64,000 bases of DNA, taken from positions 1 to 64,000 of IMG/VR virus record IMGVR_UViG_3300023313_000001; one strand, written 5' to 3'. Positions within the stretch are counted from its first letter, which is position 1. Every line of letters starts with the position of its first letter. The notes beneath the pieces are model-generated. The model saw only the letters and a program-made list of their open reading frames with translations, was not told the DNA's origin and searched no databases. Below, in pieces: positions 17,742 to 43,388 of the stretch. Made by a program: the position numbers and the translations under genes.

Positions 17742-18905
17742 ATGCAACCATTATATAGCCAACTACTCAAACTGACACAAGATTCAGAAGCATTTTATTT
17801 CACTGATCACGTATTAGACACCACCACTTATCGTATATTTTTATATCGGTTGGCATCCTATACAGATTTTTGTTTACCTGGTGCACTCGAATGTCGTGGG
17901 ACTATGTTCGAAATGGATGGTGAAGATCCAGTTCGTTTAGCTGCTCGTCCGATGCAGAAATTTTTTAATATCAACGAATGCCCGTTTACCATGGGGGTTA
18001 ATTATTCAGATGGAAATATCGAAAGTGTGATGTTAAAAGAGGATGGAAGTCTCATTAGTACATTTATCCACACTGATGGTGAACTATACTGTAAATCTAA
18101 AGGATCTCTAAGCTCCGACCAAGCACAATGGGCTAATGCGTGGATACGCAAGGAGTCTATGCGGTACGATCAACTTAAAACAGTTACCAATCTGGGTAAT
18201 ACTATAAACTTAGAATATTGTGCACCGTTTAATAGAATTGTGTTAAATTATAATTGTGAAAGTATGATCATTCTTAATGTGCGTCAAATAAGTAGTGGAC
18301 TATACTTACCCAAATCCACGTTTAAGGACACTTGTCCATACATCCCTACCATATGGGTTAACAATATAGAAGATACTGATATTGAGTATGACACGTTGGA
18401 ATCATTAATTGATGATACTCCCAATTTGGAAAACATTGAAGGGTTCGTCGTTCGTTTAAAAAATGGATTGCATTTTAAAGTCAAAACTAATTGGTACTTA
18501 GTTCAACATAGAGCTAAAGATAGTATTGATTCCCCTCGTAGGTTGTTTGAAGCTGCTATTACAGAAGCTACTGATGATTTACGATCGTTGTTTACTGACA
18601 ACCAATTTGTGTTAGATAAAATAACAGAGATGGAAGAGAAAGCTGCTGGAATCTATAATCATATTGTTGAGAGAGTTGAACGATTTGTTAAAACGCATCA
18701 TGATTTAATTGAAAATGATTGTCGTAAGGATTTTGCCATGTTAGGCCAACAGGCGTTTCTAGGAACAGATAAACGATTGTTTGGTTTAGTAATGATGTGT
18801 TATAAACGTGAACGTGGGGATGGTGATGGTCCAGATTATAAACAATTTTGTATCAAAAATTGGAGAGACTGGGGATTAAAAGATGGCCCTGAGGATGATG
18901 AATAA
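17742..18905 (+). CDS. rnlA: RNA ligase 1 (T4 RnlA-like)
   Basis: YRLASYTDF...ALECRG.MFE, PMQKFFN.NE, motif I KEDGSLI, EY.AP.NRIV, EGFV, FKVKT.WY. Confidence 0.92.
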   Translation: MQPLYSQLLKLTQDSEAFYFTDHVLDTTTYRIFLYRLASYTDFCLPGALECRGTMFEMDGEDPVRLAARPMQKFFNINECPFTMGVNYSDGNIESVMLKEDGSLISTFIHTDGELYCKSKGSLSSDQAQWANAWIRKESMRYDQLKTVTNLGNTINLEYCAPFNRIVLNYNCESMIILNVRQISSGLYLPKSTFKDTCPYIPTIWVNNIEDTDIEYDTLESLIDDTPNLENIEGFVVRLKNGLHFKVKTNWYLVQHRAKDSIDSPRRLFEAAITEATDDLRSLFTDNQFVLDKITEMEEKAAGIYNHIVERVERFVKTHHDLIENDCRKDFAMLGQQAFLGTDKRLFGLVMMCYKRERGDGDGPDYKQFCIKNWRDWGLKDGPEDDE

Positions 18906-26649: not shown

Positions 26650-26704
26650 CAAATAGCACAATACGTGCGACGCTCTTTAACAATATGAATAAAAATTTGG
26701 TTTT

Positions 26705-26778
26705 ATCAACACGATAGTTCAGTTTGGTTTAGAATAGTCTTGTTACAGAAGTTGGGTTCGATTCCTGACCGAGTTGAT
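26705..26778 (+). ncRNA. tRNA-like element lacking a proper anticodon arm (pseudo-tRNA)
   Basis: TCAAC/GTTGA acceptor, TAGTTCAG..GG..AGAAT D arm, GGG-TTCGATT-CCT T arm; no CCA. Confidence 0.45.
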
Positions 26779-26904
26779 ATTTTTAAAATGATCGGGTATG
26801 AGTCCTCCCTATCTTGAAACATATAATAGGATCTGCAATGCGGAGTATAGGCCCAGCAATAAGAGCAAACACTATATGGAATGAGAGCAGCGTTCAAATA
26901 TTAA

Positions 26905-32386: not shown

Positions 32387-33529
32387 GTGGATTTACTCAA
32401 TATACCGAAAACTATTCATATAGGTGTCAATAAACGAAATGACACTTATACTGGTCATTTAGCTTATGTAATCTATACTGATGAAAAAGGCAAGAGACGG
32501 AAAGAATGCAGTTGGGAAAGCTGGAGAGATACCTCGATCGATCCAATTGATTATGATAACGTGCCAACTTCAGGATTTGTATTAAACAAGGGTGTCGGTG
32601 GTGGTAGATCTGGCGGTGGATGGAATGCTCGCAATGAATACATTCGGGTATACGATCCTCGTAATTTTGAGTTTGAAATTTCGGTAGCCAATTTATTATT
32701 CATATTGCAAGAGACAAATTCAATTAAAGGCAAAGGACTCGAAGGAGAATTTGTCTACTCATGGTCAGGAGCAGATTTAGTCCTACTCCCTGTGGCCAGT
32801 GCAGAATATGCTGCATCAACCGAATTTACAAATGCAAAAACCATGAAAGTCACCAAGAAAGATATGGTGGAAGGTTGTGTATATCTTAGTAAAGATATGA
32901 GAGAATTAGTTTACTTAGGTCGACATAAATGTAGACAATATTACGGATATAGTGATACATTCGGTTATAATGAATTAACCACACCTCCGGAAAAATTCTT
33001 TCATGTTTTTTATGATGTAGAAACTGAGAAGTATGATTTCGAACGTGGATTTACCAAATTATGTAAAAAGGTTAGTGATGAATCCTACCACGATTATGCT
33101 AATCTACATACTGAATTGGTTGATAGCAAATATTGTTCACTGTTATCCAAAACAATACTGACCCCTGTTACAATAGATGACATGCCTCCAACAATATGGA
33201 GAGATTGTAAGTTTTTCATTAGACGTGATGACCATTATGATATGTATCAAATAACAAACAATCACTGGAAATGTAGTCATAACGATAATACACCGTTGAA
33301 TACTGTTATCACATTAGATGGTGACACTGTAACTGATATCGAATTTGGTTCACGTGAAGTTAAACCTAGACACGGTGGGTTTAATCATGGACCGTCATAT
33401 AAAGAACACTACATTGACCATACAAAATTAGTAAAAATGGGTGACATTGAAATGTTTACCATAGAATATTTACTAGAATCTGGATTAACATTAGGAGTAC
33501 AAGATTATGTCCAACGACAATCAAATTAA
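32387..33529 (+). CDS. conserved phage hypothetical protein
   Basis: ORF track; LAYVIY.DEKG..RKE.SW.SWR, GFVLNK.VGG, RVYDPR.FEFEI. Confidence 0.75.
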   Translation: MDLLNIPKTIHIGVNKRNDTYTGHLAYVIYTDEKGKRRKECSWESWRDTSIDPIDYDNVPTSGFVLNKGVGGGRSGGGWNARNEYIRVYDPRNFEFEISVANLLFILQETNSIKGKGLEGEFVYSWSGADLVLLPVASAEYAASTEFTNAKTMKVTKKDMVEGCVYLSKDMRELVYLGRHKCRQYYGYSDTFGYNELTTPPEKFFHVFYDVETEKYDFERGFTKLCKKVSDESYHDYANLHTELVDSKYCSLLSKTILTPVTIDDMPPTIWRDCKFFIRRDDHYDMYQITNNHWKCSHNDNTPLNTVITLDGDTVTDIEFGSREVKPRHGGFNHGPSYKEHYIDHTKLVKMGDIEMFTIEYLLESGLTLGVQDYVQRQSN

Positions 33530-33929
33530 AGACTACAGAACTAAGGTAGAAGCCAAACGATCAGCTCTAGGCAGTAAACCTAGAGTGAACTACGTAACTA
33601 ATATGTTACTACCACTCAACGATAGTAAGTTGAATCTCAATTTAATGAATACAGAAAAGGCGTGCATAGATGTTGCACAACAGCTTGCAATGATGCATAA
33701 CGCACAAGTACAAGCTAATGAATGGTTAGGTACTTCACAATCACTTACGGTAGGTAATTTCAAAGTGGAAGAGTGGGTGGAAGATATTAGAACTCGTTTG
33801 TCTATTATTAACTGGGATCAAGAAAAACAAAAACTAAATGCTATGGACACCAAGCTAGCTGGATTGTTAAGTGAGGATGCCAAAACTGCTAATGCTATTG
33901 CAGACATTGCAGGCGAATTAGGTTTATAG
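33507..33929 (+). CDS. hypothetical protein, partner of the preceding gene
   Basis: ORF track, AGGAG RBS. Confidence 0.7.
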   Translation: MSNDNQIKDYRTKVEAKRSALGSKPRVNYVTNMLLPLNDSKLNLNLMNTEKACIDVAQQLAMMHNAQVQANEWLGTSQSLTVGNFKVEEWVEDIRTRLSIINWDQEKQKLNAMDTKLAGLLSEDAKTANAIADIAGELGL

Positions 33930-33935
33930 AATTAC

Positions 33936-34089
33936 CCACACTGGTACCTGATATATTACATTACTATGCATGGTAATGTAATACCAAGCGATTAGGGCAT
34001 GGTATCACGGACATTTGAACAGTATGCTCCTATGCATGGGAGTTGCTACTACATAATGTTCACGGGTTCGACTCCCGATGTGTGGTCCA
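33936..34089 (+). ncRNA. enlarged tRNA-like RNA (~154 nt) with T arm and CCA
   Basis: CCACAC/GTGTGG terminal stem, T-CCA, CGGG-TTCGACT-CCCG T arm, two long internal hairpins. Confidence 0.55.
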
Positions 34090-34326
34090 AATAATGCGAT
34101 GAAGTAGGTACAGCATCTAAATAGTCCAATGATGTAGGTTGTACAGTCGACCGTGCACAAAAAGCTGCAGCAAATTTTGCCGACTACGTATCATAGATAG
34201 TATGATTTTGGTTAAACTAATTTAATATGAAAGTAGTCCCTACATATTCATTAGACTTGAGATGATAGTTTACGTGGTGAGATGCCTGGTTGGTATAAAT
34301 ACAATACATTATATAGGAATTTAATC

Positions 34327-40618: not shown

Positions 40619-41137
40619 ATGTTATCAATTTACACCCCCGAAGTAAAATTAACCCCATCTATTAACATGTTTGTAGCTGGCAGTATTGAAATGGGAACTG
40701 CTGAAAATTGGCAAGACCTTCTGTTACAAAAGCTATCACTATTTAATGATGATGAATCATTTAACCTCAATGTGTTTAACCCTCGTCGAGCTGATTGGGA
40801 TACATCTATTGATCCTACATCCAACGATCCCGAGTTAATGTATCAAATTAATTGGGAGTTAGATGCATTAGATACAGCAGATATTATTGTATTGTTCTTA
40901 GATCCGAACACTAAATCTCCAATATCGTTATTAGAATTAGGATTATACTCTGGTAAGCGACTGATAGTGTATTGCCCACCAGAATTTTATCGAAGTGCTA
41001 ATGTACGAGTTACCTGTGCACGACACGACATTGAATTGCACACCGATCGTAAGGAATGGATTGATTCTATATTGGGTACTATATTGATATTACTTGAACG
41101 AAAGATAACCCCTACAACAGTCCTGGATTTCCAATAG
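40619..41137 (+). CDS. nucleoside 2-deoxyribosyltransferase-like protein
   Basis: F.AGSIEMG.A.NWQ, FNPRR.DWD, QINWEL.AL..AD, SPISLLELGL. Confidence 0.85.
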   Translation: MLSIYTPEVKLTPSINMFVAGSIEMGTAENWQDLLLQKLSLFNDDESFNLNVFNPRRADWDTSIDPTSNDPELMYQINWELDALDTADIIVLFLDPNTKSPISLLELGLYSGKRLIVYCPPEFYRSANVRVTCARHDIELHTDRKEWIDSILGTILILLERKITPTTVLDFQ

Positions 41138-41230
41138 GTAATAAGCGTTAGATATAGTTATGTGGTTGATATCAACATGGAGTTACCGTAACCCTGTTGT
41201 ATTAATGTCAAATGTATGTACAATTGCTTC

Positions 41231-41327
41231 ACTGATTTGTTGCGAAGCGTAGAGTTACTTCAAAAATACTCGACCTTAACCGTCGAGCTTAATGCTTACA
41301 CTTTTCGTGTTTTTATCTCAAACCAGT
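41231..41327 (+). ncRNA. Y RNA 1 (Ro60-associated, no tRNA-like domain)
   Basis: Shared TGCGAAG..AGAGTTACTTC / TCG..TTTTATCTCA motifs, terminal stem, upstream of Ro60. Confidence 0.7.
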
Positions 41328-41351
41328 ACTAAACGGGCTATATAGTAGCAC

Positions 41352-41443
41352 GTTTTTAAGAATATTGCTGCGAAGCATTGGGTTACTTCACTTTTAATGA
41401 AACTAACACCCTATCGCGATTTTATCTCAGTATTCTTAAAAAC
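41352..41443 (+). ncRNA. Y RNA 2 (Ro60-associated)
   Basis: Same motifs; long terminal stem TTTTAAGAATATTG/CAGTATTCTTAAAA. Confidence 0.7.
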
Positions 41444-41578
41444 ATGTTGCTGCGAAGATTAGAGTTACTTCTATGGTAAAGACGAGATGTTGGTTCGAGT
41501 CCAACTCAATCCGTAAGGATTGATAGCTTAACGGATAAAGCACGAAAATCTCTCTCATCGATTTTATCTCAACATGTT
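41441..41578 (+). ncRNA. Y RNA 3, YrlA-type with permuted tRNA-like domain
   Basis: T arm GTTGG-TTCGAGT-CCAAC, closed acceptor hairpin, then D arm TAGCTT..GG..AAGC. Confidence 0.8.
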
Positions 41579-41660
41579 ATTATTAATATTATCAACTTCG
41601 TTAACTATTTTGAAATGATAACGGAAAATACATTTCCATAACCTCACAAAATATTTAACG

Positions 41661-41800
41661 AAGTTGATGTTGCGAAGATTAGAGTTACTTCTCCCTGGAT
41701 GTCGTCGGTTCGATTCCGACTTTAGGATCTGATTCCTTTATAGCTCAGTTGGTAGAGCGCCTGGCTCAACAGTCTCTTATCGTTTTTACCTCATCAACTT
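41661..41800 (+). ncRNA. Y RNA 4, YrlA-type with permuted tRNA-like domain
   Basis: T arm GTCGG-TTCGATT-CCGAC, then TAGCTCAGTTGGTAGAGC D arm. Confidence 0.8.
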
Positions 41801-41840
41801 GTTTTATTTAAGCTGCTCAATCTCTTAATAGGAAACTACA

Positions 41841-43388
41841 ATGACTAAAATGAACCCAAAAAATACAAACACTAACCGTTACAAAGGCGTGAGCTTTAAC
41901 AGGAATGTTCAAGAACTGAAAGGTGCTGAACAAGCTCTGTATGAAATCATTGTAACTACTTTATTCGGTAAGGATAAATTTTACGAATCAAATGATGAAA
42001 CACTAGTGCGTTTAAAAGATGCTGTGAATAAGGTCGTTGCTAAAGGTAACGTGGATTTCATTGCAAACTCAATCGTGCACGCTCGTTCAGTAATGAACAT
42101 TCGTTCTATGCCAGTAATATTAACTGTGTTGTTGGCAGAGTCTCTCCGTGCACACAATACTACATATGAAAACATGCGTCGATTGACTACGGATGTTATT
42201 CAACGTGCTGATCAAATCAATGATTTATTTGCGTATGCAGTAAACGTATTTGGATCGGGTAAAAAAGTTCCTATGGCAATCAAACGTGGTTTAGCTGATG
42301 CATTCAACAATTTCGGGGCATACGCTTTTGCGAAATACAATCGCACTAATGGAACGGTAAAGTTCACCGACGTATTGCGTGTTGTTCATCCAAAAGCTAA
42401 GGATGTGGCACAGGCTGAAATTTTCGATAAACTAATGAATGGATCACGTATTGAGCAAACAGAAGCTGGTACACTTTCAACTCCGTACACCTGGGAAACT
42501 GAATTATCAGAAGCAGGTAAAACTGGAAAGTCAAAAGCTAAAGTTTGGACAGAACTAATCAAGTCTGATAAATTAGGTTATATGGCACTGTTACGTAACT
42601 TACGTAATATGATTCAGGAAGGCGTAAGTACTAGTGTGATGAATTCCGTGTATGAGCGACTAGCTGATCCAGAACAAGTTGTTAAGTCTAAGCAACTACC
42701 ATTTCGTTTCGTGAATGCGTATGATGCTGTGGTAGGTGCTCCTGCGAAGATGAAACGTGCTATCTCTCGTGCTATGGATGCTAGTTTATCAAACATACCT
42801 TCACTTGGGGATAACCTTTGGATAGTTGTGGATGTTTCGGCTTCAATGGATGGTACGTGGAGTCTAAGAACTTCCGATGGAGCAGCACCAATTAACACTG
42901 CAACATTATTTGCTGCAGCATTAGCGAAAGCCAATGCTGAGGCTGATAATGTAAAAATAACGTTATTTAGTGATGGTGCTAAGCATGCTTCTATCAATAC
43001 TGACGATAGTGTTATGTCTATTGCTTACAAACTACGTAAAGAGGTTTACGGTGGTGGAACTAACCTGGAGGCAGCACTAAGTGAGATTAAAACTCTCGGA
43101 TTTAAACCAGACACCGTGGTATTGTTTAGCGATATGCAGGTTAACCGGTTACGTGGTGGCAAATCAGTATCTAGTTACTTTGATGACAACACTATTAAGG
43201 TGGCTATAGATCTTACCGGATATGCTTCAACCCCAGTAGGTCCAATGGATGGCTGGCATCAATTGTCAGGATGGAGTGAACGTTTGTTTGATTTCATTCC
43301 AGCCATTAAAAACAAGTCTTCAGTGACGAAACAACTTTCAGTTCCTTATCTCGGGGTAGCTGGAATTAAGAAGCTCCACCGTCAGTAA
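41841..43388 (+). CDS. Ro60/TROVE-vWA RNA-binding protein (Rsr)
   Basis: D.FYES, YAFAKY.R, DVLRVVHPK, PYTWETELS, LGYMALLRNLRN, SKQLPFRF..AY, vWA DVSASM, GGTN, SDMQ. Confidence 0.92.
   Translation: MTKMNPKNTNTNRYKGVSFNRNVQELKGAEQALYEIIVTTLFGKDKFYESNDETLVRLKDAVNKVVAKGNVDFIANSIVHARSVMNIRSMPVILTVLLAESLRAHNTTYENMRRLTTDVIQRADQINDLFAYAVNVFGSGKKVPMAIKRGLADAFNNFGAYAFAKYNRTNGTVKFTDVLRVVHPKAKDVAQAEIFDKLMNGSRIEQTEAGTLSTPYTWETELSEAGKTGKSKAKVWTELIKSDKLGYMALLRNLRNMIQEGVSTSVMNSVYERLADPEQVVKSKQLPFRFVNAYDAVVGAPAKMKRAISRAMDASLSNIPSLGDNLWIVVDVSASMDGTWSLRTSDGAAPINTATLFAAALAKANAEADNVKITLFSDGAKHASINTDDSVMSIAYKLRKEVYGGGTNLEAALSEIKTLGFKPDTVVLFSDMQVNRLRGGKSVSSYFDDNTIKVAIDLTGYASTPVGPMDGWHQLSGWSERLFDFIPAIKNKSSVTKQLSVPYLGVAGIKKLHRQ

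What the first reader, a model, noticed from the sequence alone, without database searches (positions are those of the whole stretch)
33936..34089. Oversized tRNA-like RNA with twin TATGCAT-capped hairpins
Seen: the 5' CCACAC pairs with 3' GTGTGG-T-CCA, preceded by a canonical GGTTCGACTCC T arm. The D and anticodon regions are replaced by two extended arms, TATTACATTAC-TATGCATG-GTAATGTAATA and TGAACA...CTCC-TATGCATG-GGAG...TGTTCA. Both are capped by the same self-complementary ATGCAT. Inference: an unclassified tRNA-mimic ncRNA, processed by RNase P/CCA machinery, whose palindromic loops could kiss or dimerise. It could alternatively be an intron-containing tRNA.
Basis: partly seen in the sequence, partly recalled or inferred. 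Interest (0 to 1): 0.6.

Follow-up and report, generated by a model that had tools for sequence, protein, structure and literature searches.

The report
Phage tRNA-mimic RNA with kissing arms
This jumbo-phage segment encodes a real, conserved ~154-base RNA that keeps the top half of a tRNA but replaces the lower half with two long arms whose tips pair with each other, the same plan I find in phage T4's RNAC (species 1 RNA), whose role is still unknown.

Summary
Window 33936-34089 (+) folds into a 6-bp acceptor stem ending U-CCA, a canonical T arm, and two long arms each tipped by AUGCAU.

It is not a chance fold. Four related elements (three lineages) on uncultured marine jumbo-phage contigs match a covariance model of it over the full length (52-60 bits). 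On a MAFFT alignment, 99% of cells pair, against 29-47% in slid controls. Twenty-one of 43 pairs show compensatory changes.

In the relatives the two hexaloops are not palindromes. They are exact complements of each other (GUGCAU / AUGCAC), so the likely interaction is an intramolecular loop-loop kiss, not dimerisation.

It is not a decoding tRNA, an intron-bearing tRNA, a Y RNA, a tmRNA or coding sequence.

The closest known thing is T4 RNAC (species 1 RNA). RNAC has the same plan, including complementary hexaloops (UUGACG / CGUCAA) with a compensatory change in Yersinia phage TG1. Reciprocal covariance models find no homology beyond the tRNA-like module, so it is an analogue, not a demonstrable family member.

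The function is inferred only: a stable, non-decoding mimic of the tRNA top half, matured by tRNA-processing enzymes. I rate it a new variant of a known but unexplained kind.

The parts
33936..33941 (+). Acceptor stem, 5' strand (CCACAC)
   Evidence: Pairs with 34080-34085. Four of the 6 pairs show compensatory changes across the 5 sequences.
33942..33948 (+). D-stem-like helix P2, 5' strand (UGGUACC)
   Evidence: Pairs with 34001-34007. All cells pair, and 2 pairs show both-side changes: UGAUGUC/GACAUCA in L005 and L056.
33949..33953 (+). Conserved junction, NGAUA (the conserved GAUAU runs one base into hairpin 1)
   Evidence: GAUAU is invariant in all 5 sequences.
33954..33983 (+). Hairpin 1: 11 counted base pairs plus hexaloop AUGCAU (33966-33971)
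   Evidence: Seven of 11 counted pairs show both-side changes. The loop is GUGCAU in the relatives.
33984..34000 (+). Remainder of the D-loop-like region, with a conserved G-rich patch (UGG/GGG)
   Evidence: Alignment A5 columns 49-65. A role as a G18/G19 equivalent is inference only.
34001..34007 (+). Helix P2, 3' strand (GGUAUCA)
34009..34061 (+). Arm 2, the anticodon-arm equivalent: about 20 bp with internal loops, and hexaloop AUGCAU (34032-34037)
   Evidence: The base helix GGACAUU/AAUGUUC covaries with GGCAU/GUGUC and GGGUGC/GCACUU. The distal helices covary. The loop is AUGCAC in the relatives.
33966..34037 (+). Proposed 6-bp loop-loop kiss: 33966-33971 pairs with 34032-34037
   Evidence: The six pairs form in all 5 sequences. 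One pair switches from A-U (window) to G-C (the 4 related sequences). A comparable complement arises in about 3% of shuffles and in 0 of 17 other oversized tRNA-like candidates.
34063..34077 (+). T arm: CGGG-UUCGACU-CCCG
   Evidence: Invariant apart from one loop base. Matches the GGTTCRANTCC motif shared with the phage's tRNAs.
34078..34089 (+). 2-nt linker (AU), acceptor 3' strand GUGUGG, discriminator U, encoded CCA
   Evidence: The relatives end G-CCA, U-CCA or GCCCA.
33507..33929 (+). Upstream 140-aa ORF (phrog_2574). Its TAG stop lies 6 nt before the RNA's 5' end
   Evidence: This ORF and the 380-aa ORF (32387-33529, phrog_2475) lie within about 1 kb of the RNA in all five genomes.

Best explanation
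Window 33936-34089 (+) is the gene for a stable non-coding RNA of about 154 nt, built on a tRNA scaffold but not used for decoding.

Shown:
- A four-way junction is conserved by covariation. It joins a 6-bp acceptor stem with an N-CCA tail, a canonical T arm, a 7-bp D-stem-like helix carrying a hairpin of about 12 bp, and a long anticodon-arm-like helix.
- The two hexaloops are exact complements in every member.

Inferred:
- The loops form an intramolecular 6-bp kiss that locks the lower half into a closed, compact shape. There is no anticodon loop.
- The RNA is co-transcribed with its upstream gene and excised like a tRNA: RNase P at the 5' end, and 3' trimming with CCA repair at the other end. 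It then accumulates as a discrete RNA.
- It acts through the part that stays tRNA-like, the acceptor/T minihelix with CCA. The likely role is a mimic or decoy for a protein that recognises the tRNA top half, such as a processing or modification enzyme or a tRNA-end-targeting toxin or defence nuclease.

It is the architectural counterpart of phage T4 RNAC (species 1 RNA). I find that RNAC has the same plan, including complementary hexaloops.
For: Structure:
- Homologues match the covariance model of the element over its full length: L005 at 54.8 bits, L056 and L057 at 52.3, L059 at 59.7 and L060 at 53.5.
- On a MAFFT alignment made without any structure input, 43 pairs are 99.1% paired, against 29-47% in slid controls. 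Twenty-one pairs have both-side changes, against 0-3 in slid controls.

Kiss:
- Loop 1 and loop 2 are complementary in 5 of 5 sequences, with an A-U to G-C switch.
- Only about 3% of shuffles show any 6-nt complement between loops.
- None of 17 other oversized tRNA-like RNAs from related phages show one.

tRNA-gene style:
- The T-loop motif and the encoded CCA match the phage's own tRNA genes, on the same strand, inside a tRNA-rich region.

T4 analogy:
- RNAC folds with an acceptor-like stem, two long arms and a T arm.
- A seven-genus alignment gives 94% of cells paired and 23 covarying pairs. The hexaloops UUGACG and CGUCAA are complementary in 7 of 7 sequences, with a compensatory change (UUGAUG/CAUCAA) in Yersinia phage TG1.
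- RNAC genes sit a few bases from flanking tRNA genes.
- RNAC is a real late RNA, seen on northern blots, and its function is unknown (PMC9697503, PMC3014915, PMC12685909).
Against: - There is no expression, end-mapping or binding data for this uncultured phage.
- Only five sequences, about four independent lineages, are available. The kiss rests on one compensatory event in each family.
- Reciprocal covariance models do not link the two families beyond scores typical of tRNAs: 17.7 and 13.6 bits. The shared plan could be convergence or partly coincidence.
- T4 RNAC does not encode CCA, and its acceptor-like stem has two U-U mismatches.
- The decoy function is pure inference. No partner protein was identified, and the conserved 380-aa neighbour has no recognisable fold.
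Confidence: 0.6

Rival explanations
1. It is a functional but highly aberrant tRNA. Either it is spliced from two insertions, or it is chargeable as it stands and supplies an amino acid during translation or to some other acceptor.
For: - The acceptor stem, T arm and encoded CCA are tRNA-like.
- Related phages do carry tRNAs with insertions of 16 to about 180 nt.
- The window lacks Ser, Leu, Gly, Pro and Trp tRNAs.
- ARAGORN sometimes calls a Phe(GAA) tRNA among the deletion variants.
Against: - ARAGORN in intron mode finds nothing, and the Rfam tRNA model does not hit at E<=10.
- The deletion scan gives 96 calls in 67,172 variants, against 27-559 in shuffled-interior controls.
- No 7-nt anticodon-like loop with U33 is conserved. 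The GAA is AAA in L005 and L056.
- The supposed 'intron' arms are conserved with covariation, and their loops pair with each other.
- The acceptor identity positions and the discriminator base are not conserved.
Confidence: 0.1
2. It is only a processing or stability signal. A tRNA-like structure placed after the 140-aa gene would let RNase P define the mRNA's 3' end, or would protect it from 3' exonucleases. The RNA would have no role of its own.
For: - It starts 6 nt after the upstream ORF's stop codon.
- No promoter-like or terminator-like signal above background flanks it.
Against: - In the four related sequences it does not follow an ORF. It lies among other tRNA-like RNAs upstream of the gene pair.
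- A punctuation signal needs only an acceptor/T minihelix. It does not need two long covarying arms with complementary loops.
Confidence: 0.12
3. It belongs to the phage's Ro60/Y RNA system, either as a ligand or as a substrate mimic of the TROVE protein encoded 7.7 kb downstream.
For: - The window encodes a TROVE plus vWA protein at 41841-43388.
- Relatives L056 and L057 encode one too.
- Bacterial Y RNAs of the YrlA type contain tRNA-like domains (own knowledge: Chen et al. 2014).
Against: - The TROVE gene has its own array of YrlA-like RNAs directly upstream, with sub-threshold Rfam YrlA hits of 32.9 and 27.5 bits.
- The element shows no YrlA match.
- Its 5' and 3' ends form an acceptor stem rather than a Ro-binding stem, so the topology is not permuted as it is in YrlA.
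Confidence: 0.05
4. It is not an RNA gene. It is either a C-terminal extension of the upstream ORF read through TAG (the phage carries a CUA-anticodon tRNA), or a chance fold.
For: - The upstream reading frame stays free of TAA and TGA for 54 codons past its TAG stop.
- A tRNA with anticodon CUA lies at 640-717.
Against: - TAG ends 10 of 67 long ORFs in the window, and in one case another stop follows immediately.
- The homologous elements have stop codons in all three frames and are not downstream of an ORF.
- The substitution pattern is compensatory base pairing, not codon-wise.
Confidence: 0.01

Closest known systems
Phage T4 RNAC (rnaC, 'species 1 RNA'; NC_000866 70908-71046) and its homologues in Tevenvirinae
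   Same: - Both are phage-encoded, lie on the same strand as a tRNA gene cluster, and are about 140-155 nt long.
- Both close with an acceptor-like terminal stem and have a canonical T arm (UUCGAAU in T4, UUCGAYU here).
- In both, the D-arm and anticodon-arm positions are occupied by two long helices.
- In both, the two hexaloops are perfect 6-nt complements, with one compensatory change in each family.
- Neither is in Rfam.
- Neither has a known function (PMC3014915, PMC9697503, PMC12685909).
   Different: - No sequence or covariance-model homology is detectable beyond the tRNA module.
- T4 RNAC does not encode CCA, and its terminal stem has two U-U mismatches.
- In T4 the whole D-arm equivalent is a single long hairpin. 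Here a 7-bp helix carries an inserted hairpin plus a loop remnant.
- The loop sequences differ: UUGACG/CGUCAA in T4, RUGCAU/AUGCAY here.
Canonical and intron-bearing tRNAs (Rfam RF00005)
   Same: Acceptor stem, T arm with a T-loop consensus, discriminator base plus CCA, and a four-way junction.
   Different: It has no D loop of normal size, no 7-nt anticodon loop and no variable region.
Bacterial and phage Y RNAs of the YrlA type (Rfam RF02553)
   Same: Both are tRNA-mimicking non-coding RNAs found in phages. One such array lies in the same window, at about 41.2-41.8 kb, next to a Ro60 gene.
   Different: In YrlA the tRNA-like domain is circularly permuted, and the RNA ends form the Ro-binding stem. 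Here the ends form the acceptor stem with CCA, and there is no match to the YrlA model.
tRNA-like domain of tmRNA
   Same: Both keep the acceptor stem, T arm and CCA while the D and anticodon arms are lost or replaced.
   Different: The element has no tag reading frame and no pseudoknot series. ARAGORN's tmRNA mode finds nothing there. The phage has a separate permuted tmRNA at 50682-51024.

Membership tests
Canonical tRNA (RF00005) | Acceptor stem, T arm with T-loop consensus, and a 3' N-CCA | tested here: met
Canonical tRNA (RF00005) | Cloverleaf with a normal D arm and a 7-nt anticodon loop; detected by tRNA models | tested here: not met
   ARAGORN does not call it. The Rfam tRNA model gives no hit at gathering score or at E<=10. 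No U33-NNN-R37 loop is conserved.
Intron-containing tRNA | Removing the insertion(s) yields a canonical tRNA | tested here: not met
   ARAGORN with -i finds nothing. A scan of 67,172 two-deletion variants gives 96 hits, against 27-559 in shuffled controls.
T4 RNAC / species 1 RNA | Encoded co-directionally in a phage tRNA gene region; about 140 nt | tested here: met
T4 RNAC / species 1 RNA | Terminal acceptor-like stem, T arm, and two long arms in place of the D and anticodon arms | tested here: met
T4 RNAC / species 1 RNA | Complementary hexaloops on the two arms (a feature defined here) | tested here: met
   Complementary in 5 of 5 sequences here and 7 of 7 in Tevenvirinae, with one compensatory change in each family.
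T4 RNAC / species 1 RNA | Sequence or covariance-model homology to rnaC | tested here: not met
   R2 scores T4 rnaC at 17.7 bits and R3 scores the element at 13.6 bits. Ordinary tRNAs score the same. blastn finds no match.
T4 RNAC / species 1 RNA | Accumulates as a discrete stable RNA late in infection | not testable with these tools
   Shown for T4 by northern blot (PMC9697503). No transcript data exist for this uncultured phage.
YrlA-type Y RNA (RF02553) | A Ro-binding stem formed by the RNA ends, a permuted tRNA-like domain, and adjacency to a Ro60 gene | tested here: not met
   No YrlA hit on the element. Its ends form the acceptor stem. The Ro60 gene lies 7.7 kb away and has its own YrlA-like array.
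tmRNA | A tRNA-like domain plus a tag ORF and pseudoknots | tested here: not met
   ARAGORN with -m finds nothing. Rfam matches only a 15-nt T-arm fragment at 9.3 bits.

The most novel reading that the evidence does not exclude
Large tRNA-carrying phages share a recurrent, so far unrecognised class of 'locked' tRNA mimics, and T4 RNAC is its founding member. In this class the D-arm and anticodon-arm equivalents are tied together by a loop-loop kiss. Only the acceptor/T minihelix is left exposed. The RNA would serve as a decoy or inhibitor for host factors that act on tRNA ends, for example tRNA-targeting defence toxins or processing enzymes. This would give a function to an RNA that has been an orphan since the 1970s.
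Probability: 0.2. Interest if true: 0.8.

Novelty: new variant of a known kind. Interest (0 to 1): 0.6.

Why it matters
T4 RNAC has been known for about 50 years, is conserved in hundreds of T4-like phages (748 records), and still has no function. An unrelated-in-sequence RNA from marine jumbo phages has the same unusual plan, and in both families covariation points to a kiss between the two arms. That makes a concrete structural hypothesis directly testable in T4, a tractable system. It also gives a search descriptor (acceptor stem, T arm, two arms with complementary hexaloops) for finding more of these RNAs, which tRNA finders and Rfam currently miss. If they turn out to be decoys for tRNA-directed defence or processing proteins, they would add an RNA-based layer to the phage-host conflict over tRNAs.

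Tried and rejected
**Searches for more relatives**
- GenBank phages by blastn: no relative of the locus or the element.
- IMG/VR, by protein, protein alignment and three DNA patterns: only the source contig IMGVR_UViG_3300023313_000001. One chance hit in a coding region (L003).
- JGI metagenomes: the protein alignment found nothing. A DNA pattern returned 39 loci, all unrelated tRNA-derived repeats or ordinary tRNAs by covariance model and by eye.
- GTDB genomes: 4 pattern hits, none a member.
- Vibrio phage pv27, a cultured phage with a homologue of the 380-aa neighbour: no member within +/-20 kb of that homologue.

**Alternative identities**
- Intron-bearing tRNA: rejected.
- TAG read-through coding: rejected.
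- tmRNA: rejected.
- Y RNA: rejected for this element.

**Context**
- The promoter and terminator scan gave nothing above background.
- The 190-nt spacer downstream (34090-34281) shows no significant fold, z = -0.9.

**Neighbouring 380-aa protein (phrog_2475)**
- No Pfam, NCBIfam or PDB sequence match.
- The AlphaFold2 model has mean pLDDT 81, but Foldseek finds nothing at E<=0.001. VIA-align's best match is Z = 5.1, on a small beta-barrel domain only. No functional clue came from it.

**Other**
- Homology to T4 rnaC was tested with covariance models in both directions and not found.
- I could not retrieve a paper documenting RNase P processing or the 3' end of T4 species 1 RNA. That point rests on my memory of the 1970s-80s T4 literature and is marked as such.

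Full report
**Context**

The window is the first 64 kb of IMGVR_UViG_3300023313_000001, a 229.5-kb uncultured phage contig.
- All substantial ORFs lie on the + strand.
- ARAGORN and Rfam find 19 tRNA genes, including one with a CUA anticodon, and a permuted tmRNA.
- The window also encodes a T4 Rnl1-like RNA ligase and a Ro60/TROVE protein.
- The phage has no close relative among GenBank phages at the DNA level.

**Checking the observation**

- CCACAC pairs with GUGUGG, followed by U and CCA.
- The T arm is CGGG-UUCGACU-CCCG.
- Two arms are each tipped by AUGCAU.

The minimum-free-energy fold is a four-way junction at -50.4 kcal/mol, z = -2.78.
- A 7-bp helix (UGGUACC/GGUAUCA) continues directly from the acceptor stem and carries hairpin 1.
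- The base of arm 2 is GGACAUU/AAUGUUC, not TGAACA/TGTTCA.

ARAGORN does not call the element. No Rfam family matches it at gathering score, and none matches meaningfully at E<=10. The T-loop motif GGTTCRANTCC occurs 19 times in the window against 0.12 expected, and the copy at 34065 is one of four that lie outside called tRNAs.

**Homologues**

The upstream 140-aa protein has relatives at 50-56% identity on short metagenomic contigs. The 380-aa protein before it has many more. I fetched contigs that encode these proteins.

A covariance model built from the window element alone (R1) matches four related elements over its full length.

| Locus | Coordinates | Bits |
|---|---|---|
| L005 | 416-565 | 54.8 |
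| L056 (L057 identical) | 9309-9458 | 52.3 |
| L059 | 9125-9273 | 59.7 |
| L060 | 8785-8936 | 53.5 |

L060 comes from an NCBI metagenome-assembled genome labelled Neptunomonas. Ordinary tRNAs score at most about 18-20 bits with the same model. In these relatives the element sits in a cluster of tRNA-like genes 0.5-1 kb upstream of the same 380-aa/140-aa gene pair. In the window it sits 6 nt downstream of the pair. Further scans of IMG/VR, JGI metagenomes, GTDB genomes and Vibrio phage pv27 found no other member.

**Covariation**

I used a MAFFT alignment of the five sequences, made without any structural input (A5), and counted the 43 pairs of the proposed structure on it.

| Measure | Proposed structure | Slid controls |
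|---|---|---|
| Cells paired | 99.1% | 29-47% |
| Pairs with changes on both sides | 21 | 0-3 |

- No column shuffle out of 500 reached the observed values.
- The acceptor stem changes from CCACAC/GUGUGG to GGGCAC/GUGCUC, GGGUAC/GUAUCC and GGGU(A/G)C/GUACUC.
- Helix P2 changes from UGGUACC/GGUAUCA to UGAUGUC/GACAUCA.
- Hairpin 1 has 7 covarying pairs.
- The base of arm 2 also covaries.
- The T arm, a GAUAU junction and both loop cores (UGCA) are invariant.

With only about four independent lineages these numbers are suggestive rather than statistically rigorous. They are, however, consistent across every helix.

**The loops kiss rather than dimerise**

In the window both hexaloops are the palindrome AUGCAU. 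In all four related sequences loop 1 is GUGCAU and loop 2 is AUGCAC. These are different sequences that are exact reverse complements of each other.
- The six loop-loop pairs form in 5 of 5 sequences. The outermost pair switches from A-U to G-C (helix 4).
- The conserved property is therefore complementarity between the two arms of one molecule, not self-complementarity.
- A 6-nt Watson-Crick complement between any two hairpin loops (taken with 2 flanking nt) appears in 29 of 1000 dinucleotide shuffles.
- It appears in none of 17 other oversized tRNA-like candidates from the related contigs.
- Duplex energies are modest, -4.7 to -6.3 kcal/mol, which I take to be in the usual range for loop-loop kisses.

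**What it is not**
- *Coding sequence.* TAG terminates 10 of 67 long ORFs in the window. The homologous elements have stop codons in all frames.
- *Intron-bearing tRNA.* ARAGORN in intron mode finds nothing. The Rfam tRNA model is silent on the element, although it does detect a 142-nt insertion-bearing tRNA in L060. Deleting every combination of two segments gives 96 ARAGORN calls in 67,172 variants, against 27, 106 and 559 in three shuffled-interior controls.
- *Decoding tRNA.* No anticodon-like 7-nt loop, acceptor identity pair or discriminator base is conserved.
- *tmRNA.* ARAGORN's tmRNA mode finds nothing.
- *Y RNA.* The Ro60 gene at 41841-43388 has its own upstream array of four repeats. 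Two of them give sub-threshold YrlA hits of 32.9 and 27.5 bits. The topology of those RNAs is permuted relative to this element.

**Closest known: T4 RNAC**

T4 encodes two small stable RNAs in its tRNA cluster, rnaC (species 1) and rnaD (species 2). rnaC is 139 nt and folds into an acceptor-like terminal stem, two long arms and a T arm CCGGG-UUCGAAU-CCCGG, with z = -4.6. blastn finds it in 748 phage records.

I aligned T4 with six diverged members from Karamvirus, Kagamiyamavirus, Moonvirus (two), Tegunavirus and Gelderlandvirus.
- 94% of cells pair, and 23 pairs covary.
- The tip of arm 1 (UUGACG) is the exact complement of the hexaloop of arm 2 (CGUCAA) in all seven.
- Yersinia phage TG1 carries UUGAUG and CAUCAA, a compensatory double change.

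T4 RNAC therefore shares the whole plan, including the kiss. I do not know of this interaction having been described, but I could not search the older literature.

Membership in the same family is not demonstrable.
- The model of our family scores T4 rnaC at 17.7 bits.
- The T4-family model scores the window element at 13.6 bits.
- Both values are at the level of ordinary tRNAs.
- Rfam has no rnaC family.

The literature agrees that RNAC and RNAD have unknown roles (PMC3014915). They are late RNAs confirmed by northern blot (PMC9697503) and were still described as of unknown function in 2025 (PMC12685909). My recollection that species 1 RNA is matured by RNase P like the neighbouring tRNAs comes from the 1970s-80s T4 literature. 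I could not verify it here.

**Likely mechanism**

Shown: a conserved tRNA-derived four-way junction, an intact acceptor/T minihelix (N-CCA encoded in the window, L059 and L060; GCCCA in L005/L056), two arms with complementary loops, and no anticodon.

Inferred:
1. The RNA is cut out of a longer transcript by RNase P and the 3' tRNA-processing enzymes. It starts 6 nt after an ORF stop, and no promoter-like or terminator-like signal above background flanks it.
2. The kiss closes the lower half into a rigid body that cannot decode.
3. The exposed tRNA-like top half is the working surface. This suggests a mimic or decoy for a protein that recognises tRNA ends.

Which protein that would be is unknown. 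The only conserved neighbours, the 380-aa and 140-aa proteins (phrog_2475 and phrog_2574), gave no clue. They have no family or PDB sequence match. A confident AlphaFold2 model of the 380-aa protein (mean pLDDT 81) has no convincing structural neighbour: Foldseek finds nothing at E<=0.001, and the best VIA-align Z is 5.1, on one small barrel domain.

**Verdict**

This is a genuine, conserved structured RNA and a new family. It is best described as an RNAC-like 'locked' tRNA mimic. Two points need correction: the loops kiss within the molecule rather than drive dimerisation, and the intron hypothesis fails.

| Claim | Confidence |
|---|---|
| The RNA and its secondary structure | about 0.85-0.9 |
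| The intramolecular kiss | about 0.6 |
| It works like T4 RNAC | about 0.5-0.6 |
| A decoy function | about 0.2-0.25 |

Noticed in passing
window 41130-41840 and ORF 41841-43388: The ORF encodes a Ro60/TROVE plus vWA protein. Directly upstream are four tandem repeats of a conserved stem motif (UUGCGAAG..AGAGUUACUUC paired region, with CGAUUUUAUCUCA). Two of them enclose T-arm, acceptor-loop and D-arm pieces in permuted order. They give sub-threshold Rfam YrlA hits at 41461-41574 (32.9 bits) and 41697-41761 (27.5 bits). This looks like a phage Y-RNA array next to rsr. Relatives L056 and L057 also carry a TROVE gene, preceded by a 1.2-kb non-coding gap.
   Followed up: partly
window 50682-51024: A circularly permuted (two-piece) tmRNA gene encoded by the phage. 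Rfam tmRNA_permuted scores 114.6 bits, and ARAGORN predicts the tag peptide ANDNFFATAIAA.
   Followed up: no
window 640-717: A tRNA with a CUA anticodon (amber-reading; ARAGORN labels it 'Pyl'). TAG is nonetheless an ordinary stop codon in 10 of 67 long ORFs of the window. It may be a suppressor used against host defences or for a subset of genes.
   Followed up: partly
window 26694-26779: A degenerate tRNA-like sequence with acceptor TATCAAC/GTTGATA and T arm GGGTTCGATTCC. Neither ARAGORN nor Rfam calls it, and its anticodon stem is poor.
   Followed up: no
L005 573-708; L004 1783-1929; L056 9466-9601; L059 ~9280-9420; L060 ~9050-9200: A second conserved oversized tRNA-like RNA family lies immediately downstream of the element's homologues. 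It has a 7-bp acceptor stem, a T arm and an ACCA end, with a near-invariant core AGACUUGGRAACGUCUGGUGAWCUCUAGGGGG. It is absent from the window, has no loop-loop complement, and its nature is unknown.
   Followed up: partly
L013 7387-7478 and 7482-7589; L014 20074-20245; L011 1754-2007; L060 2364-2505; L007 2463-2707: Related phage contigs carry tRNA genes with normal acceptor, D and T arms but insertions of about 16 to 180 nt in or near the anticodon loop. ARAGORN's default mode misses them. The Rfam tRNA model catches only the L060 one among those scanned (L056/L059/L060). Several insertions look too short to be group I introns.
   Followed up: no
L004 ~1400-1530; L005 ~50-190: A T arm and 3' acceptor strand are followed about 100 nt later by a 5' acceptor/D-arm-like segment (CCAGGTAGCTCTGG). 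The order is permuted. This may be another YrlA-like RNA inside the tRNA cluster.
   Followed up: no
window 5095-6117: A 340-aa ORF combines a periplasmic solute-binding domain (SBP_bac_3, Lig_chan-Glu_bd) with a potassium-channel-type pore (Ion_trans_2). This is a glutamate-receptor-like ligand-gated channel encoded by a phage.
   Followed up: no
window 17742-18905; L014 8393-9787; L056 5118-5525: This phage group carries many tRNA-repair and tRNA-metabolism genes: a T4 Rnl1-like RNA ligase in the window, a CCA-adding/poly(A) polymerase-HD enzyme in L014, and a PTH2 peptidyl-tRNA hydrolase in L056, L059 and L060.
   Followed up: no
window 34090-34281: The 190-nt non-coding spacer after the element contains an imperfect direct repeat (ATGAAGTAGGTACAG / ATGATGTAGGTTGTACAG). 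It shows no significant fold (z = -0.9), and no homologue was available to test it.
   Followed up: partly
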